Shown here: positions 17,594-31,402 of the stretch, one piece after another
Position numbering within the stretch: position 1 is the first letter of the stretch
How the letters are laid out: each line of letters starts with the position of its first letter
IMG/VR virus record: IMGVR_UViG_3300044640_001495
Location: 186,001 to 250,000 of that record
Reading direction: 5' to 3' (one strand)
Length of the DNA stretch: 64,000 nucleotides
The notes under the pieces: generated by a model
Database searches by the model: none
The model's input: only the letters and a program-made list of their open reading frames with translations
Told to the model about the DNA's origin: nothing
Made by a program: the position numbers and the translations under genes

Positions 17594-18460
17594 ATGACAA
17601 TAATTACGCAGCCTCCTAAGATCAAGTATCTTACCAACAAGGATCTACTAAAAGAAATACATCTCAGCAAGAATACCTATTGCACCTACAGCGATCCTGC
17701 ATACAGTGACTATGATTTAATCATCCCAAATTTGTCTAAAATCAATATTAGAACAATTGCCGATGCCAAGAGAAATCGTGCCATCAAGATGGGTAAAAAA
17801 GCCCACGAACTTGCACAGTCAGGTGGTAAAAAGTTTCCTGCCAAAGATTACGAAGTTGACTACAAAAAAATCCTTAAAACTGATGTGGTGTTTAGAGTCA
17901 TGACCTTTGAACATGTGCCGCTTGCACCAGGAAGAAAAAAGACCTTGAAGAATACCGCAGATAGTCATGAGAAGGTGAATTTTCCTCCTTTCCAACACTG
18001 GAAGTTTGATGAAAATGACAATCTTATATTGGTGGGTAAAAGTCATTGGAAAGGTGATTTTGTTACTGGCTCCTTTAACAAAGAGCATGGACAAATGACT
18101 AACAATCTAGCCCGCATGTTCTTAAAATTATGTGAGCGGTATGCAACTAGAGGCAACGTGCGTGGCTACACTTATAATGACGAAATGCGTGGACAGGCTA
18201 TTCTACAGCTAACTCAGATTGGTCTACAGTTTGACGAATCAAAATCTGACAATCCGTTTGCCTACTACACGGCTGCTGTTACAAATTCATTCGTTAGAAT
18301 TATCAACATTGAAAAACGTAATCAAAATATTCGTGATGATATTTTAGAAATCAATGGCATGAATCCATCATGGACAAGACAGAATGCTTCGGGTAAGCCA
18401 GGTGGCGGATACGGACCAGTTAGTACTGCACCAGTAGACGGGGGTGGAGATTGGGATTGA
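17594..18460 (+). CDS. gp55: Late-transcription sigma factor, T4 gp55-like, with a large internal insertion
   Basis: YLTNKDLLKEI near the N-terminus; LARMFLKLCERYATRGNVRGYTYNDEMRGQA..QFDESKSDNPFAYYTAAVTNSFVRIINIEK matches the gp55 core. Confidence 0.85.
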   Translation: MTIITQPPKIKYLTNKDLLKEIHLSKNTYCTYSDPAYSDYDLIIPNLSKINIRTIADAKRNRAIKMGKKAHELAQSGGKKFPAKDYEVDYKKILKTDVVFRVMTFEHVPLAPGRKKTLKNTADSHEKVNFPPFQHWKFDENDNLILVGKSHWKGDFVTGSFNKEHGQMTNNLARMFLKLCERYATRGNVRGYTYNDEMRGQAILQLTQIGLQFDESKSDNPFAYYTAAVTNSFVRIINIEKRNQNIRDDILEINGMNPSWTRQNASGKPGGGYGPVSTAPVDGGGDWD

Positions 18461-21287: not shown

Positions 21288-21514
21288 GTTCAGAAAGCCA
21301 TGACAAGATGATTGCTGCTTTTCAGGAATATTTTAAGTGGCAAGAACGATTTGAATACAAAGGCTCTGACGAAGCAGGCATTAAGGCACGATATTGGCTA
21401 TCAGAAATACGTAATGAAGCAAGCGTAAGGCGCATAGAAATACAGGCAAAAAGAGAAGAACGCAAACAAGCCAGAAAAGGCATGATAGGAAGGCCCAAGA
21501 AAATAAGTACCTGA
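21284..21514 (+). CDS. Small basic protein resembling the histone H1-like (Hc1) family
   Basis: KGSDEAGIKARYWLSEIRNEASVRRIEI resembles the Hc1 motif KGNKAAGxRARK; TTG start overlaps the gp46 stop, with a GGAG SD. Confidence 0.55.
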   Translation: MSSESHDKMIAAFQEYFKWQERFEYKGSDEAGIKARYWLSEIRNEASVRRIEIQAKREERKQARKGMIGRPKKIST

Positions 21515-21948
21515 TGACATGGTACTATAAGAAGAAAGAAGTTGTTGAAATCTCCGAAGATTACATCGGTTTCGTATATCTTATTACTAATGTCGTCTCT
21601 GGGCGCAAGTATATAGGCAAAAAACTAGCCAAGTTTGCAAAGACCACTTATAAAACAGTAACTTTGAAGAACGGCAAAAAGAAGAAAAAGAAAATTAGAG
21701 GCAAAATTGAAAGCGATTGGAAGGACTATTATGGTTCTAGCGATGCGCTAACAGCAGACGTACAGGCCTTAGGCAAAGAAAACTTCACCAGAGAAATATT
21801 ATTCTACTGCAAAAACAAATCAGAATGCAGCTACATCGAGGCAAGAGAACAATTCAAACACAAAGTTCTAGAATCAACTGACTGGTACAACGGTCACATA
21901 CAGGTTCGAGTTCACGGCTCACATATCCTCAAAAAACCCAAAATTTAA
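21514..21948 (+). CDS. Minimal GIY-YIG (Seg-like) endonuclease, 144 aa
   Basis: GFVYLITN..SGRKYIGKK, YYGSS, conserved E (YIEAREQ) and WYN; Lys-rich insert; no C-terminal DNA-binding domain. Confidence 0.85.
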   Translation: MTWYYKKKEVVEISEDYIGFVYLITNVVSGRKYIGKKLAKFAKTTYKTVTLKNGKKKKKKIRGKIESDWKDYYGSSDALTADVQALGKENFTREILFYCKNKSECSYIEAREQFKHKVLESTDWYNGHIQVRVHGSHILKKPKI

Positions 21949-21959
21949 CAAACACACAC

Positions 21960-22460
21960 CGCCACTAGGCTCAATAAATCTAGGCAACAAACTGCCAAAT
22001 AAGCCCGCACCGGCGTTGTTAGTGTGCCCTTAAAGCTGGATCTCGGATCGCAGTCAATGGAATTCCCTACTTGGCAGAGGGGTTGTACAGTAGTATCCTT
22101 AACAGGACCACGATCGGATATGCCTACAGAACCGGTTTACTGTACAAGAAAGTATTATATCAAGGCTAAAGATGGGAGAAAAACCCACGGTTGTTGCGCA
22201 AGACTGCGTTTGTGTAGCAATCCGCCGTCATTAATAAGACTTGGCTCGAGGTACCGGATGACCGCCTCTGTAAACGCCATAACGCCGTATGTACTGTGCA
22301 ACTCGCATAATGCTTCTTAGCCCGCAAGGGCTAAGTATGACTGAACAATCTGCATAATACTTAAATTGCTTCGCAATTACAATAATCAACACAGTTTAGG
22401 AGAAAGAAAATTCGTTGAGCGAAAGCGAAAACGAATGTGAGCTTCAGCTCACAATTACAA
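21960..22460 (+). ncRNA. Candidate large structured non-coding RNA (or structured origin)
   Basis: 540-nt gap in an otherwise compact genome. It contains a long-range helix (22011-22017/22281-22287), a 10-bp helix (22083-22092/22138-22147), a G-U-rich helix (22189-22223) and GNRA-capped hairpins (22316-22335, 22410-22436). Confidence 0.6.
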
Positions 22461-22488: not shown

Positions 22489-23961
22489 ATGAGAGTAAGC
22501 AATATAATATTTGAACAACATATGATTAATTCTAATAAAATCCTATTAGAATCATGTCATGACCTTGATATCGAACAACAGGCAGTTGTTGAAGGTATTT
22601 ACAACGAGTTACGACCTTTAATCGAAGCTAGTCTTAGTGCTGATCAAATTAAAACTATATTTGGTAGTATAGAGAAGTCTGCAACTGATGCTGGCGGTAA
22701 TAGAACCATGCTGGGCAAAGGTGTTGACGTAGCTAAAAAAGCTGATGAAGTGGTCAACAACATTGGTAAATGGCTACAGGATACTACTCCAGTTAAGGCA
22801 TTTGATCAAAAGTTCGATAACTTAAAGAATAAAATCAATACCAAGTTTCCAGATAGTAAAATTTTAGATATGATTTCAAATATGGGAATCTATGCTACAA
22901 ACAATCCTGGAAAGACTGCTGCAATTATTGGTGTTCTAACTGCTATTGCTGCCTTAGCAGGCGGGCCAGTAGGCGGTGCTATTGCTGGTCAAGTACTGCG
23001 TGGTGCTGTAGAATTACTTAAAGGCGAAAAATTATCCACTGCCTTAGGCAAAGGTATTAAAACTGCTGCCTATGGTTTCATTGCAGGAAAGACTTTCGAA
23101 TTGCTAGGCGACGCAATCAAAGGCGGAGCACAGGTAGTTAAAGATAATCTGTTTCCAAACGCACTTCGTTTAAACATGACTCAGGTCTTTGATGAAGTTG
23201 GCGGTGAACTAGGTACTCGCTGGGCTAATTTTGAAATTAAAGGACTAGTTGGTAGACCTGAAGACATTAACACAGCTAAAAAATTGTTTGGCGAAGCTGG
23301 GCAATATTGGAAAGCCGGAGACTATGAGCAGAGTGCAGCCACTTGGAAATCACTGGAAGGCTTGATTGCTGACACATTCAACGATAAAGAATACATAGCG
23401 CAGATTGCGTCTGATCAAGCTAGTAGAACTATGATCAGTCAGGCAGCACAAGCTGCTCAAGAAGCTACTAAATATCTTGGAGCGGCTGCACAGGGTGCAG
23501 TAGCTGCCGCAGGAGTTAAAGGTGCTCCTGCTAAAAAAGAATCTATACAACATCATCAACGTCCCTTAAGTGAAGGACAAGTGTATCTGGTGTTTAAACG
23601 AATCACCGAATCGCAACTCAACGAAGGGCCAGCGGATGCTATCAAGGGTCTGGCTGGCAAGGTCATGAACAAGGCTCGCACAGTTGGCACCAATCTAACA
23701 ACTAAGATTACTGCTGACAAATTAAATTCTGCTTGGCAAAAGGCAGGCGCACCCGTTGACAGTGAAGAACTTAAAAAGTTTTTAACCACTCAAGGTGTTG
23801 ATGCTGCAATAGTAGACGGCGTATATAAATCTTTAAAAATCAAGAGTGGTGTTGCAGCCACATCTTTGTATGCACAAGTTAAAACAGATTTAGCAAAACT
23901 AGACATGAAAGGCAAACAGCGTCTTTCGGCTTATCTACAAAAACAATTAGGAACTGCTTAA
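22489..23961 (+). CDS. Probable internal head/ejection protein with a glycine-zipper hydrophobic segment
   Basis: Late promoter; L-x-E sites (LLES, LIEA, LSEG, LNEG) of the gp21 cleavage type; AAIIGVLTAIAALAGGPVGGAIAG hydrophobic stretch. Confidence 0.5.
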   Translation: MRVSNIIFEQHMINSNKILLESCHDLDIEQQAVVEGIYNELRPLIEASLSADQIKTIFGSIEKSATDAGGNRTMLGKGVDVAKKADEVVNNIGKWLQDTTPVKAFDQKFDNLKNKINTKFPDSKILDMISNMGIYATNNPGKTAAIIGVLTAIAALAGGPVGGAIAGQVLRGAVELLKGEKLSTALGKGIKTAAYGFIAGKTFELLGDAIKGGAQVVKDNLFPNALRLNMTQVFDEVGGELGTRWANFEIKGLVGRPEDINTAKKLFGEAGQYWKAGDYEQSAATWKSLEGLIADTFNDKEYIAQIASDQASRTMISQAAQAAQEATKYLGAAAQGAVAAAGVKGAPAKKESIQHHQRPLSEGQVYLVFKRITESQLNEGPADAIKGLAGKVMNKARTVGTNLTTKITADKLNSAWQKAGAPVDSEELKKFLTTQGVDAAIVDGVYKSLKIKSGVAATSLYAQVKTDLAKLDMKGKQRLSAYLQKQLGTA

Positions 23962-23962
23962 A

Positions 23963-24871
23963 ATGAAAATCTCTGAACTCCTCGTGGAAAGTCAACAGTT
24001 AGATGAAGGTCCAATTTTAAATAAAATTGGCTCTGCTGTGGGCAAAGGTGTTGGCGCAGTAGCCAAAGGTGTTGGCGCAGTAGCGGGTGGAGTAGCTGGC
24101 CTTGGGTCTGCTGTAAAAAAAGGATTTCAAGCAGGTAAAGCCACTGTAGGCGGCGCTGGCGATAATGCAGATCCAGCAGCAGATAATAGAAATATATTAC
24201 AAAAAGTAAGAGACACAATGCCTGGTTCAAAGGCTACAGCAGCCACAGGTGGTAGCACTGCTCAAACGGCACAAGATTCTCCTGCACCTGCAACAGGTGG
24301 CAGCACTGCTCAAACAACACAGCCTCCACAATCTACAAATAACAAAGCACCCGCTCAGAATAAATCGACATCAGCATTTGGAAAATTATCTGGGGCCGCC
24401 GCAGGACAACCAACCGACAATGCAGCAGTTAGCGGTGGTACACAGTATGCTCAAGTTAAAGCAAATATTGATAAACTTGACAAGAAAGGTAAACAACGTA
24501 TTCTACAGTTGTTGCAGAAAGAAGTTGGCACAGTGCCTGCAACTCCTAAGCCTACACCTGCTAAATCTACCGCAGGTGTTGCGCCAGCAAAACCCGCAGC
24601 AGCACCAACAGCAACAACTACTAAACCAGCATCGGTCCCGGCAGCGCCAGGAAAAGTTTTAAGAAAACCAAGAGCATTACAACAACCAGCTGCTGGAGAA
24701 GTGTCAGCTGCTGAACCAGCAGCTACTACAAAAAAATCAAGAACAAAAGCAGCTCCAACTCAAGCAGAAATTGATGCTGACCGTGAAAGAATTATGGGAG
24801 TAACTAGTGACAGCATTATTAGAACTAGGCCAATGATGGCAGAAGGTTTTAATTTGGTTAGAAAGCGTTAA
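23963..24871 (+). CDS. Probable internal head protein, Ala/Pro/Thr/Lys-rich
   Basis: MKISELLVESQQLDEG N-terminus; low-complexity linkers; shares a 30-aa motif with the upstream protein. Confidence 0.5.
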   Translation: MKISELLVESQQLDEGPILNKIGSAVGKGVGAVAKGVGAVAGGVAGLGSAVKKGFQAGKATVGGAGDNADPAADNRNILQKVRDTMPGSKATAATGGSTAQTAQDSPAPATGGSTAQTTQPPQSTNNKAPAQNKSTSAFGKLSGAAAGQPTDNAAVSGGTQYAQVKANIDKLDKKGKQRILQLLQKEVGTVPATPKPTPAKSTAGVAPAKPAAAPTATTTKPASVPAAPGKVLRKPRALQQPAAGEVSAAEPAATTKKSRTKAAPTQAEIDADRERIMGVTSDSIIRTRPMMAEGFNLVRKR

Positions 24872-24876
24872 TAAAC

Positions 24877-24902
24877 AAAAAGGACTCCTAGGAGTCCTTT
24901 TT
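24877..24902. terminator. Bidirectional intrinsic terminator
   Basis: Perfect 26-bp palindrome AAAAAGGACTCCTAGGAGTCCTTTTT between convergent genes. Confidence 0.9.
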
Positions 24903-24904
24903 TA

Positions 24905-25135
24905 TTAGAAGAACGGTAATCCGCTTTTCTTTGTAGTTTCTAAATTGTCTTTGATAATTTCACTAATGATCGAACGTTCTTCCCAACTCAAAGCCATGGC
25001 TTCGTCATAACTCATGCCTCGCATGTACCAACATATTTTTAATATGTCTTTTTTTAATTCTCTAGCCTCTTTTTCCAGCTCCGCAATATACAGTAGAATC
25101 TCCGGCTGAGGAAGTGTTAAGATCCTACCACGAAA
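24905..25135 (-). CDS. gp51-like baseplate hub assembly segment, probably expressed as a -1 frameshift extension of gp26
   Basis: ICWYMRGMSYDEAMALSWEERSII resembles gp51 and tail chaperone GT tails. The ORF overlaps the gp26 3' end in the -1 frame and has no convincing start of its own. Confidence 0.65.
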   Translation of the reverse strand, partial: FRGRILTLPQPEILLYIAELEKEARELKKDILKICWYMRGMSYDEAMALSWEERSIISEIIKDNLETTKKSGLPFF

Positions 25136-25989
25136 AAATTTGTTTGATCCATAGCAATTTCTAATGTGAATTTGTGCTGGCATTCTTCACACTCTACTCC
25201 TTCTGCTTTCAGCGCCATAATATCTTTCATTTCTTTGATTTGATCATTTACTAGATTGAAAATTTCACTTGAAGTGTTTTCCATAAATTCTTTCAACATG
25301 GCTTTATCAGTAACTGTACCATCTGGAGTTTCAATGCTGTCAATACAGTTAACCACTACATCTACAGTCATGCCTGTGAGATTTACAAAACTTTCTCCAA
25401 ATTTTGCTACTTTTTCTTCGTCTGATAACTCGTTGTCATTGACAATGGCAATTAATTTCTGCTGTTCGAATGTTTTAATAGCAATTTTTGTAAGTTCTTT
25501 GTAGGTATAGGGTCGAATATTTAATTTCAATTCACTCACAGCAAGTGTGTCATTGTATACAAAATCGCCTACTTTGTCTAGGAATGACAATAAATTTATA
25601 TCGTACTCATTACGGTGATCACAAGCAGGACAAGAACTCTTTACTTCCATTCTTTCACCATAGGTGGCAATACGAATGGCAATCAGCACCGGATCCATAT
25701 CTATACTAGGCATCAGCCAAGGATTTTTTATAGCTGGTACGCAGCTTTTTATTACTTCTACAGTGGCAGCACCATTCATTAATGCGTCAGGAGTTTTGAA
25801 CATTAATTCGTCTTTGGCTGTCATGGCAAACACAGGATATTCTTCAGTTTCGCTGATATCCAACGAGCCTTCTGGATAAAACTTTCCCTTACTGGGTAAT
25901 TTCAAATACAATTTTGGTTGTCTAAAATAGTTGGCCAGAGGGTTGTGAACTGTTTTCCTCATTGGTTGCGGAATGGTTTGATCAGGCAT
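25117..25989 (-). CDS. gp26: Baseplate hub assembly protein, T4 gp26-like
   Basis: LKLPSKG..PVFAMTAKDEL..., DMDPVLIAIRIATYGE, CPAC and CEEC zinc-type pairs, IRPYTY. Confidence 0.8.
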   Translation of the reverse strand: MPDQTIPQPMRKTVHNPLANYFRQPKLYLKLPSKGKFYPEGSLDISETEEYPVFAMTAKDELMFKTPDALMNGAATVEVIKSCVPAIKNPWLMPSIDMDPVLIAIRIATYGERMEVKSSCPACDHRNEYDINLLSFLDKVGDFVYNDTLAVSELKLNIRPYTYKELTKIAIKTFEQQKLIAIVNDNELSDEEKVAKFGESFVNLTGMTVDVVVNCIDSIETPDGTVTDKAMLKEFMENTSSEIFNLVNDQIKEMKDIMALKAEGVECEECQHKFTLEIAMDQTNFFVVGS

Positions 25990-26002
25990 TTTTTTTCTCC
26001 GA

Positions 26003-26030
26003 TAAATACTTTATCTACATTGTATTTATA
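26003..26030. promoter_or_regulatory. Face-to-face late promoters: TAAATA (+, 26003-26008) for the tape measure gene and a perfect TATAAATA (-, 26023-26030) for gp26
   Basis: Both motifs lie in the 67-bp gap between divergent genes. Confidence 0.65.
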
Positions 26031-26056: not shown

Positions 26057-29000
26057 ATGGCAGAAGTCTTCGGCGATCTTGGCGGGCAACCAATTCAACT
26101 TAATAATGCAGCTACAGAAGCTACGTTAAAACAACTTCTTGCGGCCATGCTGGCGCAGGTGGCCATGCAGAACAAAGGTACCAAAAAAGACAATGCCACA
26201 CAAAAAGAACTAGAAAAAGAACTGACCAGACTGGCAGGATCAGCTAAAGCTGTAACTAAAGCCAATGACGAACTGAGTAAATCTGCAAAGAAAAAACTAG
26301 CAGATGCTGATGCCGAAGCCAAGGCCCGTAAAAAAGCTGCGGATCTAGAACAGCAACAAATAAAAAGTCTGCAAATGGCTATTTCTGCTACAGATGCATT
26401 TGCCAACGGACTTGAACGAGGAATAACATCACTATCTAGAACCATAAGCACATTTTCAAATTTAAATTCAAGTTTTACTTCAGCTGCCAGTGCCATGTCA
26501 GGTATTCCGTTAGTAGGAGGAGCATTAGCCTCAGTGTTTGGTACGGTGGCACAAGCAGGTGAACGTACTTATAAAGCATTTCAACAGGCATCTAGTGTTG
26601 GTGCAAATTTTGGAGGCAGTATCAATGACATGATAGATTCTGCCACTAGTGCCGGCTTGACCTTTGATCAATTTTCTTCAGTGATTGCAAAAAATGGTGA
26701 AAACATTGCCATGTTAGGACAAGGAGCAGGAGATGGTGCTAAACGCTTAGCCGAACTTGGAGCCAAGATTCGAAAAAGTCCCTTATCCGCTGATCTAGCT
26801 AGACTGGGCTATACCACTGAAGACATAAACGGTGGTATGGCTAGATATGCAGGTATCTTGGCCAAGACTGGCCAGCTTGAAGGAAAAACAAATGCAGAAT
26901 TAGTACAAGGCAGTGCCGATTACCTTAAAAATATGGATGCTTTATCTAAATTGACCGGTAAAAGTAAGGACGCACTGAAAGCAGAACAAGATGCATTGAT
27001 GGCGGATGCAGCCTATAGAATTAAACTGAATAGCTTGGATGCTAAAGGACAAGAACAACTTAATGCATTAATGCTGTCGACACCAAAACATCTGCAGGCC
27101 GGATTAAAAGAAATAATCGCCTTTGGTGGTGCCACTTCTGCCGCAGGTACAAATTATATAATGATGGCTCAGCAAAGTGCAGGAGCAGCAAATCAGGCAT
27201 ATGCAGAAATGGAGCGTACGGGAACGCTGACCGCAAAAACAGCTCAAAACGTATACGATGTACAGAGAGCAGAAGCACAAGCAATAATAAAATCACCCTC
27301 AGGAAAATTATTTGCCAATGTGGGTGATTCAATACAGCAAGGTATAATACTAAGTATGTCTGACCTAGCTGCACAAAGTGGCTCCTTCACTGAAATTACA
27401 AAAAAACGCCAAGAAGCAGAAGCTGCTGCTGCTGCAAAGAGGGAAGCAGGGATAAAGGACGGATTAGATCCATCTCAACTGCAACAATTTCAAACACTGA
27501 TAGCCGAAATCAATAATCGACTCACAAAGATGGCGGCACAGTTTATGCCTGAACTAGAGTCAGCATTTAGAAAACTTGCAGATTTCACTGAAGCATACAT
27601 CGTGCCTGTGTTTAAGTTTATGTTGGAATACATTGAAGAAGTGATAATTGGCCTGGCAGTTTTAAAAGGGGCTGCACTGGCCTTTAAAGCCTATTTGGCT
27701 GTGAAAGAGTTCAAGGCTTCACTACGCGGTACCCCCGGTAATCCGATGTATGTGAAAGAAGAAGGTGGTGGAAGAGGAAGGGGAAGAGGAAGGGGAAGAG
27801 GAAGGGGAAGAGGTAGAGGTGGCAGAGTACCAACTCCATCAGGTGGTGGCAGAGTACCAACTCCATCAGGTGGTGGCAGAGTACCAACTCCAACTGCAGG
27901 AGGTGCAACCAATCTGCTGAAGGGTGTTGCATTACCTGCGATTGTAGCAGGTGCCGTGGGCTACGGTGTGGACGCTGCGGCAGGTGCGCTAGGTGTTGGT
28001 GGAAAAGAAATTGATGAAGCGCAAGATGACAAAAATTGGCAACAATTTAACCTGATCGAGAAAGCGGAATCTAGTCTGGCTAGAACAATAGAAAATGTAG
28101 GAAGTTTTATTGGCCTTAGTAATATGGCTAATCAAGCGAGAAGCGAGAGAATAGCCTTAGAAACAGCGCATCTAGCAGCCAAGACTGGTTCCACTGCCCA
28201 AGATCCAGAAGCTCTGCGCAAGATTGCCGAAGACCAGCAGGCGTCGCTAGACGATTCAAAAAAACTGCAGGACCAGCTCAAAGAAGAATTACGTGTTAAA
28301 AAAGAAGCGTTGGCGCTTGCTATCAAAGCGAATCAGCAGGCAAGATTTTCTGCAGCCACACAACAGGCACAACGAGCACTGGATAAGGAAAAACGTGAGA
28401 TTGAAGCAAGATTGGCAGCAAATGGTAAAAAAGTACAAGAAGGCCTAACAGCTACTACCAAAGCATTAGATGCTGCAAAGAAAGCCGAACTCGATGCTGT
28501 AAAAAAAGCAGAAGAAGCAGCTAAAACAACAACCGAAAAACAACCAGAGTTGAATTTCAATAGTCCTCAACAATTGTATGACTCATTCCGAAATCAACGT
28601 AATGGAGGTGCCGGAGCTCCGCAAATAGCACCGCCGAGCGGTCAACCAGGTGGCAGCTCATCTTCATCTGCAATTGGTACTGGTCTAGGTGCAGTAGCAG
28701 AAAAATATGAGTCAGCTGGAAGAGGCAGCGGCACAGTTGGTTGGGACAAAAGCGGTGGTACTAGCTACGGTAAAAAACAAATTTCATCCAGAGCCGGTGC
28801 TATGACCGACTATCTTAAGTTCCTTGAAAAGACAGGAAAAGGAGATGTTGCTAAAAAATTACGTGATGCAGGAATAGAAAAGGACACTGGTAGTACCAGT
28901 GGTAAAGCAGTTGATGTGTGGAAAGAAGTTGCAGCTAGCGGTGCGTTAGGCAACAGCGAAAATGAGTTTTTAGGACAAGGCTATCAAACGGCTCTAAGAG

Positions 29001-29632
29001 GCCTAAAAGATCAAAGTCTACAATCAAGAATTAGCGGTAGTCGTGCTCTTCAAGAAATGTTGTTTAGTACCGCTGTACAACACGGCGCCGGCGGCGCAAT
29101 GGGAATCTTTAACAGCGTGTTTAAGCCGGGCATGACAGACGAACAATTGGTAAAAGCTGTTTATGCGGAAAGGGGAGCGGATGGTGGAAAGAAACACTTT
29201 ACCAAAAGTAGTGCCAATGAAAGAGCCGGAGTTGTAAACAGATTCGGAAGAGAACAACAAGATATATTAGGATTATTAGGAACGCCTGGCACAGCGCCGG
29301 GTAGCCCCACTACAGCGCAATCAGCTGCAACCACTCCTACTACAGCGCAATCAGCCGCAATAATTCCTACCGCTACGCAGGTGGTTGCGGCAACCGCCCC
29401 CACTGCTGTTGCAGCAGTGCCTCCAGGAGCCATTGCTCCAACTAATCCAGGAACAGGAGCTGCAGGAGCTGGTGGTGGATCAAATCAGAATGTGGTGTTG
29501 GCCAGCTTGGATTTGTTAAATAAACAGATGGGGCAATTGATTGCAATCAGTACTGCTATTAGAGATGTCAATGACAGTCAATTACGCGGTATTCGTGCTA
29601 TGAGTAATGATGGCTTTATGAGTGCTGGTTAA
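26057..29632 (+). CDS. Tape measure-like protein with a C-terminal VgrG3-like peptidoglycan hydrolase domain
   Basis: 1191 aa, Ala-rich helical with hydrophobic segments, next to gp26/gp51; LGAVAEKYESAGRGSGTVGWDKSGGTSYGKKQ...MLFSTAVQHGAGGA...VYAERG...VVNRF. Confidence 0.7.
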   Translation: MAEVFGDLGGQPIQLNNAATEATLKQLLAAMLAQVAMQNKGTKKDNATQKELEKELTRLAGSAKAVTKANDELSKSAKKKLADADAEAKARKKAADLEQQQIKSLQMAISATDAFANGLERGITSLSRTISTFSNLNSSFTSAASAMSGIPLVGGALASVFGTVAQAGERTYKAFQQASSVGANFGGSINDMIDSATSAGLTFDQFSSVIAKNGENIAMLGQGAGDGAKRLAELGAKIRKSPLSADLARLGYTTEDINGGMARYAGILAKTGQLEGKTNAELVQGSADYLKNMDALSKLTGKSKDALKAEQDALMADAAYRIKLNSLDAKGQEQLNALMLSTPKHLQAGLKEIIAFGGATSAAGTNYIMMAQQSAGAANQAYAEMERTGTLTAKTAQNVYDVQRAEAQAIIKSPSGKLFANVGDSIQQGIILSMSDLAAQSGSFTEITKKRQEAEAAAAAKREAGIKDGLDPSQLQQFQTLIAEINNRLTKMAAQFMPELESAFRKLADFTEAYIVPVFKFMLEYIEEVIIGLAVLKGAALAFKAYLAVKEFKASLRGTPGNPMYVKEEGGGRGRGRGRGRGRGRGRGGRVPTPSGGGRVPTPSGGGRVPTPTAGGATNLLKGVALPAIVAGAVGYGVDAAAGALGVGGKEIDEAQDDKNWQQFNLIEKAESSLARTIENVGSFIGLSNMANQARSERIALETAHLAAKTGSTAQDPEALRKIAEDQQASLDDSKKLQDQLKEELRVKKEALALAIKANQQARFSAATQQAQRALDKEKREIEARLAANGKKVQEGLTATTKALDAAKKAELDAVKKAEEAAKTTTEKQPELNFNSPQQLYDSFRNQRNGGAGAPQIAPPSGQPGGSSSSSAIGTGLGAVAEKYESAGRGSGTVGWDKSGGTSYGKKQISSRAGAMTDYLKFLEKTGKGDVAKKLRDAGIEKDTGSTSGKAVDVWKEVAASGALGNSENEFLGQGYQTALRGLKDQSLQSRISGSRALQEMLFSTAVQHGAGGAMGIFNSVFKPGMTDEQLVKAVYAERGADGGKKHFTKSSANERAGVVNRFGREQQDILGLLGTPGTAPGSPTTAQSAATTPTTAQSAAIIPTATQVVAATAPTAVAAVPPGAIAPTNPGTGAAGAGGGSNQNVVLASLDLLNKQMGQLIAISTAIRDVNDSQLRGIRAMSNDGFMSAG
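27770..27892 (+). repeat. Tandem repeats in the tape measure gene: 12-bp GGAAGAGGAAGG x about 4 (RG tract), then a 27-bp unit x about 3 (GGGRVPTPS)
   Basis: Read directly from the sequence. Confidence 0.9.
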
Positions 29633-29704: not shown

Positions 29705-31402
29705 ATGTCATGGAAAAAGTATTTTACACCAGTTAAGTTAGACAATCAAATGGGTTCGTCTAGTCCAATCTCTGGTGGTGGCCGTCCAGGTCCTGCTCGT
29801 GCTAATTATTCTAGCTATCTTCCTGATGTCTATGCAGGCACCCCTAATCGTATTGAACGTTATATGCAGTATGACACCATGGATATGGATTCAGAAGTCA
29901 ACGCCGCCCTAGATATTCTAGCAGAGTTCTGCACACAGAAAGACAAAGAAAATGCCACTCCTTTTCAAACTTTCTATAGAGGCAATCCCACTAGTACTGA
30001 AGTTAAACTCATAAAAGAAAGTCTTCAGAAATGGACCAAACAACAACAATTTGAAACTAGAATTTTTCGCATAGTTAGAAACGCTTTCAAGTATGGCGAC
30101 GTATTTTTTATCCGTGATCCTGAAACCAAAAAATGGTTGTTTGTGGATGCAGCCAAGGTCACTAAAATTATTGTTAACGAATCAGAAGGCAAAATTCCAG
30201 AACAATATGTAGTCAAAGACATTAATTTTAATTTTAAAAATTTAATTGCAGTTACTCCACACGGCACAACAAATACCAGTCCAAGTGGAACATCAACAAG
30301 CTATTCAGGCGGTAGTCAAGGTAGAGGCATGGTAGGCAATGTTAGTCAACCTCCAGGAACTAGATTTCACAATCAAACCAACGAAGTCACAGTTGATGCC
30401 AAAAACGTAATTCATATCAGTTTATCAGAAGGACTAGATGCAAACTATCCTTTTGGTAATTCATTATTAGAATCAGTATTCAAAGTCTACAAGCAGAAAG
30501 AATTGCTTGAAGATGCTATTATTATCTATCGTGTACAACGTGCTCCTGAAAGACGTATATTCTATATTGACGTTGGAAATATGCCTGCACACATGGCCAT
30601 GAGCTTTGTAGAACGTGTTAAAAACGAAATTCAACAAAGACGTATTCCGTCATCAACAGGTGGCGGCAATAATGTTATTGATGCCAGCTACAATCCTCTA
30701 AGTGCTTCAGAAGACTACTTCTTTCCACAGACCGCTGAAGGACGTGGATCAAAAGTTGACACACTAGCAGGCGGTACAAATCTTGGTGAGATCACAGATC
30801 TACGCTTTTTTACCAACAAGTTATTCCGTGCTTTGAGAATACCGGCAGCCTACTTGCCCACAGGAATTGAAGAAGCTTCAAACACGGTTGCTGACGGAAA
30901 GGTAGGCACAGCTTATATTCAAGAATTACGTTTTAACAAATATTGCGAACGTTTACAAAACAGTATTGTGGAAACATTTGATTTGGAATTCAAGTTATGG
31001 ATGGAAAGCAATGGTGTAAACATTGACCCAAGTCTATTTGAATTAAAGTTTAACCCTCCACAAAACTTTGCGGCCTATCGTCAAAGTGAACTAGATACTG
31101 CCCGTGCAGCTACATTTGCACAGCTACAAGAAATTCCACATCTCAGCAAACGGTTTGCTATGAAACGATTCTTGGGCATGACTCAAGAAGAGATCACAGA
31201 AAACGAACGCATGTGGAGAGAAGAACAAGGCGGCAATCTAAAACCAGTGCTAGATGCCGGCGGCCAAATGAGATCTGTGGGAATTACTCCTGCAGGAACA
31301 CAGGCAGATCTAGCAAGTCAGGCAGAAGAAGCGCCAGAAGAAGCACCAGTAGACACAGGCGCAGAAGGCGAAGCTGCGCCAGCAGAAGCACCGGCCCAGT
31401 GA
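29705..31402 (+). CDS. gp20: Portal protein
   Basis: YKQKELLEDAIIIYRVQRAPERRIFYIDVGNMP, EDYFFP..EGRGSKVDTLAGG.NLGEI.D..FF..KLFRALRIP. Confidence 0.97.
   Translation: MSWKKYFTPVKLDNQMGSSSPISGGGRPGPARANYSSYLPDVYAGTPNRIERYMQYDTMDMDSEVNAALDILAEFCTQKDKENATPFQTFYRGNPTSTEVKLIKESLQKWTKQQQFETRIFRIVRNAFKYGDVFFIRDPETKKWLFVDAAKVTKIIVNESEGKIPEQYVVKDINFNFKNLIAVTPHGTTNTSPSGTSTSYSGGSQGRGMVGNVSQPPGTRFHNQTNEVTVDAKNVIHISLSEGLDANYPFGNSLLESVFKVYKQKELLEDAIIIYRVQRAPERRIFYIDVGNMPAHMAMSFVERVKNEIQQRRIPSSTGGGNNVIDASYNPLSASEDYFFPQTAEGRGSKVDTLAGGTNLGEITDLRFFTNKLFRALRIPAAYLPTGIEEASNTVADGKVGTAYIQELRFNKYCERLQNSIVETFDLEFKLWMESNGVNIDPSLFELKFNPPQNFAAYRQSELDTARAATFAQLQEIPHLSKRFAMKRFLGMTQEEITENERMWREEQGGNLKPVLDAGGQMRSVGITPAGTQADLASQAEEAPEEAPVDTGAEGEAAPAEAPAQ

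What the first reader, a model, noticed from the sequence alone, without database searches (positions are those of the whole stretch)
24905..25145. Programmed -1 frameshift fusing gp26-like and gp51-like ORFs (lambda G/GT-style tail chaperone logic in a T4-like phage)
Seen: on the minus strand gp26 ends ACA AAT TTT TTC GTG GTA GGA TCT TAA. This contains two overlapping in-register X XXY YYZ heptamers, A AAT TTT (25141-25135) and T TTT TTC (25138-25132). Six nt after the first begins a 9-bp stem, GTAGGATCT/AGATTCTAC (25128-25120/25101-25093), whose loop (CAGC) could pair with a downstream GCTG to form a pseudoknot. The -1 frame reads FFRGRILTLPQPEILLYIAELEKEARELKKDILKICWYMRG... to 24905 and has no convincing start with an SD. 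The predicted fusion is about 360 aa against the 290-aa gp26. Known: tail assembly chaperones next to tape measure genes use -1 frameshifts (lambda gpG/gpGT), whereas T4 genes 26 and 51 are treated as separate genes. Inference: gp26/gp51 here are a G/GT-equivalent pair, divergently adjacent to the tape measure gene.
Basis: partly seen in the sequence, partly recalled or inferred. Interest (0 to 1): 0.7.

Follow-up and report, generated by a model that had tools for sequence, protein, structure and literature searches.

The report
Conserved frameshift in phage gp26 gene
A giant lake-water phage, and all of its relatives examined here, appears to make a short and a long version of its gp26-type tail-baseplate assembly protein by a programmed one-base backward slip of the ribosome. 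This trick is known from other tailed phages, whereas T4 is cited as the exception.

Summary
On the minus strand the 290-aa gp26-like gene (Pfam T4_baseplate) ends ...AAT TTT TTC GTG GTA GGA TCT TAA. The -1 frame then runs on for about 75 codons without a usable start codon.

The heptamer T TTT TTC, in register, and the -1 continuation are present in all 80 related viral contigs and in Atu_ph07, PA5oct, RaK2, CBB, 121Q and Kaldavass. Xoo-sp13 has T TTT TTT instead. The two Phe codons never vary at synonymous sites. Codon-position variability switches from frame 0 to frame -1 at the heptamer.

About twenty distant homologues carry the same C-terminal domain fused in frame. The predicted trans-frame product aligns with them without a gap. 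Where the contig allows a check, these fused genes sit directly after a second, short gp26 paralogue that stops where the window's frame-0 product stops. So both a short and a long form seem to be needed.

A 7-bp stem 5 nt after the heptamer is kept in 95% of cells, with some compensatory change. The proposed pseudoknot is not supported.

The extension is not gp51-like, and gp26 shows no sequence match to known tail assembly chaperone families. The lambda G/GT comparison is therefore an analogy of logic only.

None of the 74 phage records that carry the extension shows it under the baseplate-hub gene alone, as a joined coding sequence would appear. The five records read in full carry no join.

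The parts
26023..26030 (-). TATAAATA, the T4-type late-promoter consensus, 33 nt upstream of the gp26-like start codon
   Evidence: Read directly. A gp55-like late sigma factor is encoded at 17594-18460. That TATAAATA is the T4 late-promoter consensus is from my own knowledge. Promoter function is inferred.
25997..26000 (-). Shine-Dalgarno GGAG, 7 nt before the ATG of the gp26-like gene
   Evidence: Read directly.
25117..25989 (-). gp26-like baseplate hub (assembly) gene, frame 0. It encodes 290 aa with two CxxC pairs (zinc-ribbon-like) and ends ...MDQTNFFVVGS*. This is the short product.
   Evidence: ORF. Pfam PF12322 T4_baseplate at 1.2e-18 and phrog_150 baseplate hub at 5.8e-20. It is the only PF12322 gene in the 187,679-base genome record.
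25132..25138 (-). Slippery heptamer T TTT TTC, in register with Phe285-Phe286. This is the proposed -1 shift site.
   Evidence: Kept in all 84 loci and in CBB, 121Q and Kaldavass. Xoo-sp13 has T TTT TTT. TTT|TTC is fixed in 54 of 54 sequences, and the preceding codon always ends in T although its amino acid varies.
25135..25141 (-). Second overlapping heptamer A AAT TTT. A shift here gives the same protein. It is specific to one clade, not universal.
   Evidence: Present in most IMG/VR loci. Absent in L038, L042, Atu_ph07, PA5oct and RaK2 and in 121Q, Kaldavass and Xoo-sp13.
25093..25128 (-). Downstream hairpin. The conserved core is 7 bp (25126-25120 with 25101-25095) and starts 5 nt after the heptamer. 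The loop is 18 nt. In the window the stem extends to 9-11 bp. It is a candidate frameshift stimulator.
   Evidence: The core is paired in 95.1% of cells, against 23-54% for slid controls. Two pairs switch between GC and AU. The window hairpin folds at -11.6 kcal/mol with z -1.3. The tree-aware test has too few independent events to be significant.
24905..25138 (-). -1 frame extension: 77 codons counted from the two Phe codons, plus the stop. It reads FFRGRILTLPQPEIL...CWYMRG...ER...NLETTKKSGLPFF*. This is the C-terminal domain of the 361-aa long product.
   Evidence: Alignments A1 and A2. Third-codon-position variability follows frame -1 here and frame 0 upstream. The same domain is fused in frame in proteins of 319-351 aa. 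There is no Pfam, PHROG or NCBIfam match.
24877..24902 (-). Intrinsic-terminator-like hairpin AAAAAGGACTCCTAGGAGTCCTTTTT, directly after the extension's stop codon. It lies between convergent genes.
   Evidence: 11 pairs, followed by a T run. With the promoter-like site it brackets a transcription unit that holds only the two overlapping frames.
26057..29632 (+). Divergent neighbour: a 1191-aa helical, repeat-bearing protein with a VgrG3-like C-terminal domain. It is a putative tape-measure-like protein, and the portal gene follows it.
   Evidence: Pfam PF21277 at 1.2e-24. Portal gene at 29705-31402. The protein in the same position in RaK2 is annotated as similar to a tape measure protein. 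No tape-measure family matched directly.

Best explanation
The gp26-like late gene is decoded in two ways.

1. Most ribosomes are presumed to terminate at 25117 and give a 290-aa short protein.
2. A fraction slip back one base on U UUU UUC (25138-25132), where both tRNA-Phe can re-pair. A hairpin starting 5 nt downstream probably helps. These ribosomes continue in the -1 frame to 24905.
3. The result is a 361-aa long protein, ...MDQTNFF-RGRILTLPQPEIL...GLPFF. It has the same body plus a roughly 75-residue helix-loop-helix C-terminal domain.

Shown by comparison:
- The shift site, the frame switch and the identity of the long product.
- Related lineages encode the short and long forms as two separate genes.

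Inferred:
- The mechanism is ribosomal.
- The ratio of the two products is set by the frameshift.
- The hairpin acts as a stimulator.
- The two forms cooperate as non-structural chaperones in assembling the central hub around the tape-measure-like protein, as lambda gpG and gpGT do for the tail.

The confidence given (0.85) is for the frameshift and its product. The chaperone mechanism is much less certain, at about 0.3.
For: - Heptamer and continuation. The heptamer and a continuation of 64-74 aa beyond the frame-0 stop are kept in 84 of 84 loci, down to 23-38% identity in the extension. Four more cultured jumbo phages also keep a slippery heptamer.
- Closed -1 frame. In RaK2, PA5oct, Atu_ph07, CBB, 121Q and Kaldavass the -1 frame is closed 1-5 codons before the heptamer.
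- No own start. Only 9 of 57 distinct loci have any ATG before codon 12 of the extension, and only one of those has a Shine-Dalgarno-like motif.
- Frozen synonymous sites. TTT|TTC is fixed in 54 of 54 sequences, although TTC is the minority Phe codon (175 against 561). Six other conserved Phe columns vary.
- Frame switch. Third-position variability follows frame 0 upstream (0.41) and frame -1 downstream (0.39).
- Natural fusions. In-frame proteins of 319-351 aa align without a gap to frame 0 followed by frame -1. The AF2 model of one of them has pLDDT 91 over the body and extension together.
- Two-gene loci. These have a short paralogue that ends 2-10 aa after the FF motif, followed by a long paralogue.
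- Stem. The 7-bp core is 95% paired with GC/AU switches. Atu_ph07 has a strong hairpin 6 nt after its heptamer, at -30.7 kcal/mol and z -6.7.
- Transcription unit. A TATAAATA motif and a terminator-like hairpin bracket just these two frames.
- Sequence is sound. 14 lake metagenome runs hold every sampled word of the stretch, and five IMG/VR contigs have an identical junction and gp26 protein.
- RNA. Contigs from RNA libraries cross the site without an indel.
- Chaperone reading. PMC3004832 lists T4 gp26 as a hub assembly chaperone. CBB_250 is missing from the part of the CBB virion mass-spectrometry table that I saw, although its neighbour CBB_251 has 29 peptides. The PA5oct gene carries no MS note, although both its neighbours do.
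Against: - There is no protein-level or reporter evidence, so the efficiency is unknown.
- In the window the full 9-11 bp hairpin starts only 2-3 nt after the heptamer. Only the conserved 7-bp core has a typical 5-nt spacer.
- RNAalifold predicts no consensus structure.
- Hairpin energies are unremarkable in the window, PA5oct and RaK2 (z -1.3, -1.0 and +0.4).
- The covariation rests on only about 2 well-supported independent events.
- Kaldavass and 121Q have TAATG at the frame-0 stop, which would allow coupled re-initiation there.
- The chaperone function is inferred. There is no sequence match to chaperone families. Structural hints to the HK97 chaperone (Z 4.2) and YqbN (Z 4.6) are within noise. 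The complex prediction of the extension with the tube protein gave no answer.
- The GenBank record calls CBB_250 a structural protein.
- The RNA evidence comes from assembled contigs, which drop rare variants.
Confidence: 0.85

Rival explanations
1. The downstream frame is a separate small gene. It would be translated by its own initiation, or by termination-reinitiation at the gp26 stop, and would give a free protein of about 60-90 aa. This is how GenBank records annotate it.
For: The window has an ATG at 25183 in the -1 frame. Kaldavass and 121Q have TAATG overlapping the frame-0 stop. Many records annotate a small hypothetical ORF there.
Against: Start codons are not conserved. 30 of 57 loci have no ATG, GTG or TTG before codon 12 of the extension, and only one ATG has a Shine-Dalgarno-like motif. 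The annotated starts differ between phages and cut off the conserved FFRxxIL...EI segment. This reading does not explain the frozen TTT|TTC or the T-ending preceding codon. It also does not explain the gap-free alignment with the in-frame fusions.
Confidence: 0.05
2. The same long protein is made by transcriptional slippage. RNA polymerase would add one U in the run of six, rather than the ribosome slipping.
For: The shift site is a homopolymer (T6, or T7 in Xoo-sp13). These phages use modified or their own transcription machinery, including the late sigma factor. The contig data cannot exclude rare variants.
Against: Six T is shorter than the runs usually needed for efficient polymerase slippage (my own knowledge). 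The conserved feature is the in-register X XXY YYZ pattern, including the final C, plus a downstream stem at frameshift spacing. RNA-library contigs from three runs cross the site with no inserted base.
Confidence: 0.06
3. The frameshift is real, but only the long protein matters. On this view the heptamer merely corrects an old indel, and the 290-aa product is a by-product with no role of its own.
For: Distant homologues have the domain fused in frame. The AF2 model places the body and the extension in one confident model.
Against: In every in-frame locus whose contig reaches upstream, the long gene is preceded by a separate short paralogue ending at the same point (L085, L093 and L095; partial in L086 and L094). 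T4 gp26 itself ends 3 aa after its FF motif, like the short form. A corrective shift would not be expected to last across lineages this divergent instead of being repaired.
Confidence: 0.12
4. The split is an assembly or sequencing error in a homopolymer, or a decaying gene.
For: Homopolymer runs are prone to error.
Against: The junction and the gp26 protein are identical in five IMG/VR contigs, and 14 lake metagenome runs hold every sampled word of the stretch. The same arrangement appears in independently sequenced isolates from nine host genera. The extension's variability pattern fits purifying selection in frame -1.
Confidence: 0.01

Closest known systems
Lambda gpG/gpGT tail assembly chaperone frameshift (Levin 1993; Xu, Hendrix and Duda 2004, 2013, 2014; summarised in PMC5009743)
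   Same: A -1 shift on a slippery heptamer a few codons before the stop of a tail-assembly gene gives a short protein and a C-terminally extended one with the same N-terminal body. The gene lies next to a tape-measure-like gene. The protein was not seen in the part of the CBB virion proteome table that I read, and the PA5oct record carries no MS note for it.
   Different: The protein family differs (PF12322, with no match to chaperone families). The gene is divergent from the tape-measure-like gene, not directly upstream on the same strand, and is about 55 kb from the tube gene. The heptamer differs: T TTT TTC here, against G GGA AAG in lambda (from memory). Binding partners are untested.
Phage P2 gpE/gpE+E' frameshift (Christie et al. 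2002; recalled from memory, not read here)
   Same: Both are contractile-tail phages. The -1 shift is on a T-rich heptamer (T TTT TTG in P2, as I recall) near the end of a small tail gene upstream of the tape measure.
   Different: P2 E is a small protein of about 90 aa that sits in the canonical position between the tube and tape-measure genes. Here the body is 286 aa with zinc-ribbon cysteines and belongs to the T4 hub module.
T4 gene 26 (gp26 and the internally initiated product 26')
   Same: It is the same Pfam family. T4 gp26 ends ...EFFELL*, three residues after the same FF motif, like the window's short form. T4 also makes two polypeptides from the gene, and its record annotates CDS 26 and 26'. 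Leiman et al. 2010 list gp26 as a hub assembly chaperone.
   Different: T4 has no slippery heptamer at the FF motif (TTC TTT), no -1 continuation (gene 25 follows directly) and no homologue of the extension. Its second product is an N-terminally truncated form, not a C-terminally extended one.
T4 gp51 (baseplate hub assembly catalyst)
   Same: Both are non-structural hub assembly factors encoded next to gene 26 in T4.
   Different: There is no detectable similarity to the extension or to the full-length family (hhalign 2% and 9%). gp51 has 249 aa, and its gene is transcribed divergently from gene 26.
E. coli dnaX tau/gamma
   Same: Both are bacterial-type -1 frameshifts on a homopolymeric heptamer followed by a stem-loop, and both give two forms of one protein in a set ratio.
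   Different: In dnaX the shift truncates the protein, whereas here it extends it. No upstream Shine-Dalgarno-like stimulator is evident here.

Membership tests
Programmed -1 ribosomal frameshift cassette | An X XXY YYZ heptamer in register with the upstream frame | tested here: met
   T TTT TTC at 25138-25132 is in register. Register was checked again for four more phages.
Programmed -1 ribosomal frameshift cassette | The heptamer is conserved at synonymous sites across homologues | tested here: met
   TTT|TTC in 54 of 54 sequences, against mixed usage at six other conserved Phe columns. The preceding codon is always NNT, while its amino acid is N, D, H, S or R or A in Xoo-sp13.
Programmed -1 ribosomal frameshift cassette | The -1 ORF is under protein-coding selection and has no conserved start of its own | tested here: met
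   The variability periodicity switches frame at the heptamer. An ATG is present in 9 of 57 loci, and only one has a Shine-Dalgarno-like motif. The -1 frame is closed 1-5 codons upstream in the cultured phages.
Programmed -1 ribosomal frameshift cassette | A stimulatory RNA structure 5-9 nt downstream | tested here: inconclusive
   The 7-bp core with a 5-nt spacer is 95% paired and has two covarying pairs. However, RNAalifold predicts nothing, the energies are ordinary and there are too few independent events. The pseudoknot candidates are 46% and 78% paired without compensation.
Programmed -1 ribosomal frameshift cassette | The trans-frame protein is observed | not testable with these tools
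   No proteomic data could be searched. Natural in-frame fusions show what the product should be.
T4 gp26 / PF12322 T4_baseplate | Significant match to the family profile over most of its length | tested here: met
   E 1.2e-18, 68 bits against a cut-off of 24.5, profile positions 31-210 of 219. phrog_150 at 5.8e-20. The model's structural neighbours in BFVD are baseplate hub proteins.
T4 gp51 | Sequence or profile similarity of the downstream ORF to gp51 | tested here: not met
   hhalign probability is 2% for the extension profile and 9% for the full-length profile. The profile search of 1.84 billion proteins listed only small ORFs and proteins of 319-351 aa among its best 150 hits.
Lambda G/GT-type tail assembly chaperones | Two products that share an N-terminal body, made by a -1 shift near the 3' end | tested here: met
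   (comparative evidence only).
Lambda G/GT-type tail assembly chaperones | Gene order of tube gene, then chaperone, then tape measure, all on one strand | tested here: not met
   The gene is divergent from the tape-measure-like gene. The tube gene lies at 138-139 kb of the genome record, against about 83 kb for gp26.
Lambda G/GT-type tail assembly chaperones | Sequence or fold homology to known chaperone families | tested here: not met
   No chaperone family is found at E up to 10 in any of 21 members. There is no Foldseek match in the PDB. Only weak VIA hits appear, to HK97 2ob9 (Z 4.2) and YqbN 3klu (Z 4.6), below the tool's noise guide.
Lambda G/GT-type tail assembly chaperones | The short part binds the tape measure, the extension binds the tube protein, and both forms are required but absent from virions | tested here: inconclusive
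   The complex prediction for the extension with the tube protein returned 'no answer'. The tandem short and long paralogues argue that both forms are needed. Absence from the virion is suggested only by the excerpt of the CBB table and by the PA5oct annotation.

The most novel reading that the evidence does not exclude
gp26 may be the long-missing T4-type counterpart of the G/GT tail assembly chaperone. On this reading, the need for two forms of it is met in three ways: a -1 frameshift in Rak2-like and related lake jumbo phages, gene duplication into short and long paralogues in another lineage, and perhaps internal initiation (gp26 and 26') in T4. The helix-loop-helix extension would recruit a tube or hub subunit to the tape-measure-like protein.
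Probability: 0.3. Interest if true: 0.8.

Novelty: new variant of a known kind. Interest (0 to 1): 0.66.

Why it matters
[quoted passage not shown] The roles of T4 gp26, gp28 and gp51 in hub assembly are still unsettled (PMC3004832).

This finding has three consequences:

- **T4-type tail modules do use this recoding.** A large group of phages with such modules, both cultured Rak2-like jumbo phages and many uncultured lake phages, use it in their gp26 homologue. A sister lineage encodes the two forms as separate genes.
- **It gives a testable handle on what gp26 does.** The experiments can be done in culturable E. coli, Klebsiella and Pseudomonas phages.
- **It corrects annotation.** In the 74 phage records that carry the extension, it is either called a separate hypothetical ORF or not annotated at all.

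Tried and rejected
- **gp51 homology of the extension.** Rejected.
Rejected, 46% paired.
- **An alternative CCTC/GAGG loop pairing.** 78% paired with no compensatory change, so left open.
- **RNAalifold on the junction alignment.** It predicted no structure.
- **Tree-aware covariation test.** Too few independent contrasts to be significant.
- **Solved structures.** The PDB sequence search and Foldseek found no relative.
- **VIA wide search.** It gave only generic helix-loop-helix hits for the extension and sub-threshold hits to chaperone structures.
- **Family searches on the extension.** Pfam, PHROGs and NCBIfam all found nothing.
- **Megablast of the region against phages.** No match.
- **tblastn with the window's extension.** It reached only Atu_ph07, at E 0.1.
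- **tblastn with RaK2 gp26.** It did not reach cyanophages or T4, so I did not survey other T4-like groups. I checked only T4 by hand, with a negative result.
- **Complex prediction, extension with the phage's tube protein.** 'No answer', which is not evidence either way.
- **Metatranscriptome contigs.** Only contigs were available, not raw reads, and they come from related strains at 90-97% identity. They cannot measure rare transcript slippage.
- **First profile-search job.** I re-ran it without them.
- **Literature searches.** No paper held both 'Rak2-like' and 'frameshift', and none of the titles and abstracts returned for gp26, frameshift and baseplate hub pointed to it.
Full report
**What is in the window.** On the minus strand a 290-aa ORF (25989..25117) ends ...ACA AAT TTT TTC GTG GTA GGA TCT TAA. 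It belongs to the T4 gp26 family: Pfam PF12322 T4_baseplate at 1.2e-18 and phrog_150 'baseplate hub' at 5.8e-20. The -1 frame is open from 25183 to 24905 and has no family match.

The gene is preceded by TATAAATA, which I recall as the T4 late-promoter consensus, and by GGAG. The window also encodes a gp55-like late sigma factor. A terminator-like hairpin at 24902-24877 follows the -1 frame's stop. The transcription unit therefore appears to hold just these two overlapping frames.

**What the phage is.**
- The window lies in a 187,679-base viral record from lake water.
- Nearby genes include T4-type portal, prohead protease, major head protein, gp25-like and gp5-like baseplate proteins, and gp46/47-like nuclease subunits.
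- The gp26 protein's nearest cultured relatives are jumbo myophages at 24-35% identity. They include Atu_ph07, PA5oct, RaK2, 121Q, CBB, GAP32 and Xoo-sp13.
- As in RaK2 and PA5oct, the gene is divergent from a large virion protein that is followed by the portal gene.
- The RaK2 record notes a similarity of that protein to a tape measure protein. I found no direct family match for the window's 1191-aa protein beyond a VgrG3-like C-terminal domain. Its tape-measure identity is an inference.

**Conservation of the recoding signal.**
- In Atu_ph07, PA5oct and RaK2 the gp26 homologue carries T TTT TTC in the same register, 2-7 codons before its stop. The -1 frame continues for about 64-74 codons with recognisably the same sequence. 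It is closed by a stop 3-5 codons before the heptamer.
- All 80 IMG/VR loci (53-100% identity) show the same arrangement.
- CBB, 121Q and Kaldavass show it too, and Xoo-sp13 has T TTT TTT.
- The first heptamer, A AAT TTT, is missing in several lineages. The universal site is T TTT TTC. A slip on either gives the same protein.
- At the site the two Phe codons are TTT|TTC in 54 of 54 distinct sequences. Six other conserved Phe columns mix both codons, and TTC is the rarer one overall (175 against 561).
- The preceding codon always ends in T, although it encodes N, D, H, S, R or A.
- Nucleotide variability peaks at the third position of frame 0 in the 60 nt upstream (0.41). It peaks at the third position of frame -1 downstream (0.39).
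- Only 9 of 57 distinct loci have an ATG anywhere between the upstream -1 stop and codon 12 of the extension, and only one of them has a Shine-Dalgarno-like motif. 30 of 57 have no ATG, GTG or TTG at all.

**The product is a natural protein architecture.** A profile of the 77-residue extension found 347 proteins among 1.84 billion. The listed hits are either small ORF calls or proteins of 319-351 aa with the domain at their C-terminus. The latter are full-length gp26 homologues with the domain fused in frame.

In the alignment the window's frame-0 protein is collinear up to ...MDQTNFF. The -1 peptide RGRILTLPQPEIL... then continues exactly where the fusions read ...LDFSANF-RSRIINLNEKETL.... 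An AF2 model of one fusion is confident throughout, with pLDDT 91 and pTM 0.88. Its extension forms two long helices.

**Two genes instead of one.** In the contigs that encode in-frame long forms, a second PF12322 gene sits directly upstream:

| Locus | Short gene | Long gene |
|---|---|---|
| L085 | 296 aa | 343 aa |
| L093 | 294 aa | 346 aa |
| L095 | 276 aa | 333 aa |

L086 and L094 show the end of such a gene at the contig edge. These short paralogues end ...NSNFFTR*...TSFFND*...NPADFLSKGD*, that is 2-10 residues after the FF position, like the window's ...NFFVVGS*. In L085 and L095 the pair occupies the same place, divergent from a 765-775-aa protein, and in L085 the portal gene lies beyond that protein. 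L093 shows only a cut divergent ORF upstream.

The window protein is about equally similar to both paralogues. The long genes lack an in-register slippery heptamer. This is the best available argument that both a short and a long gp26 are needed, and that the frameshift is one way of supplying them.

T4 gp26 itself ends ...EFFELL* with FF encoded as TTC TTT, and gene 25 follows at once. It therefore corresponds to the short form only.

**RNA structure.** Two pairs switch between G-C and A-U (26/21 and 42/8 sequences). These switches combine an Arg/Lys change on the 5' side with synonymous Ile/Leu changes on the 3' side. The conserved core starts 5 nt after T TTT TTC.

The support is moderate, for four reasons:
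- RNAalifold gives no consensus structure.
- The window hairpin is -11.6 kcal/mol with z -1.3.
- On a tree only about two well-supported independent contrasts exist.
- Distant relatives have different hairpins 6-7 nt downstream, and only the Atu_ph07 one is strong (-30.7 kcal/mol, z -6.7).

**Ribosome or polymerase?** The conserved feature is an in-register heptamer with a fixed final C plus a stem at frameshift spacing, and the run has only six T. Contigs from three metatranscriptome libraries cross the site without an indel. However, these are assembled contigs of related strains and cannot exclude rare slippage. I favour ribosomal frameshifting and keep transcriptional slippage as a minor rival.

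**What it is not.**
- The extension has no detectable relation to T4 gp51, and in T4 genes 26 and 51 are divergent.
- gp26 has no sequence match to tail-assembly-chaperone families and no solved structural relative by Foldseek.
- VIA hits to the HK97 chaperone (Z 4.2) and YqbN (Z 4.6) are below the level the tool itself calls meaningful.
- The gene is not in the canonical position between the tube and tape-measure genes. The tube gene is about 55 kb away.

The lambda G/GT comparison is thus one of logic, not of family.

In favour of that logic:
- T4 gp26 is listed as a hub assembly chaperone (PMC3004832).
- The CBB homologue is absent from the part of the published virion table that I saw, while its neighbour has 29 peptides.
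- The PA5oct homologue lacks the MS note that both its neighbours carry.

A complex prediction for the extension with the tube protein gave no answer.

**Novelty.**
- None of the titles and abstracts returned by my searches pointed to a gp26 frameshift, and no paper held both 'Rak2-like' and 'frameshift'.
- The CBB and Atu_ph07 papers do not contain the word 'frameshift'.
- In the 74 phage records that hold the extension it is either a separate hypothetical ORF or unannotated. No row lists it under the baseplate-hub gene alone, as a joined coding sequence would appear. The five records read in full carry no join flag.

I therefore rate it a new variant of a known kind: a familiar recoding device in a different protein family and in the tail type thought to lack it. 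The literature library is incomplete, so prior description elsewhere cannot be excluded.

**Verdict.**

| Claim | Confidence |
|---|---|
| The frameshift and the identity of the long product | about 0.85-0.9 |
| The requirement for both forms | about 0.6-0.7 |
| The G/GT-like chaperone mechanism | about 0.3 |

Noticed in passing
window 22002-22147 (+): A full-length match to the Rfam Polynucleobacter-1 RNA motif (RF01718): 82 bits against a gathering score of 37, E 8e-17. It lies in the gap between the endonuclease-like gene (21514-21948) and the next ORF. It may hint at a Polynucleobacter-type lake host, or it may be a phage-borne copy of this sRNA.
   Followed up: no
window 22489-23961 and 23963-24871 (+): Two adjacent low-complexity proteins (490 and 302 aa) with no family match. 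They share a near-identical motif: YAQVK(T/A)..(A/D)KLD(M/K)KGKQR...LQK(Q/E)(L/V)GT. They converge on the gp26 terminator.
   Followed up: no
window 27700-27930 (within 26057-29632, +): The tape-measure-like protein carries a (GR)9 run, followed by three tandem GGRVPTPSG repeats. It also has a VgrG3-like C-terminal domain at residues 877-1066.
   Followed up: no
L085 1-709 (Logan contig of SRR29078200): In the lineage with two gp26 genes, the T4-type portal gene is 963 aa long. It carries intein-splicing hits and a faint HNH hit between two portal segments, which suggests an intein in the portal.
   Followed up: no
L084 6480-7229 (T4 gene 51): T4 gp51 residues 79-98 ([20 protein letters not shown]) align weakly with the second CxxC strand of the gp26-like family (hhalign probability 9%). 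This is not significant, but it is the only point of resemblance between gp51 and this family.
   Followed up: partly
L096 1390-2031 and 2093-3196 (genome record G000, 138-140 kb): After the sheath gene the phage has a 213-aa tail tube protein (phrog_4542, 1e-52), followed by a second, 367-aa tube-like paralogue.
   Followed up: no
L092 (Escherichia phage CMSTMSU, MH494197.1) 722-1578: In this record, which is marked UNVERIFIED, the gp26 homologue is itself split into two annotated ORFs (722-1321 and 1297-1578) and matched in two pieces. This looks like an extra frame break, or a sequencing error, upstream of the conserved site.
   Followed up: no
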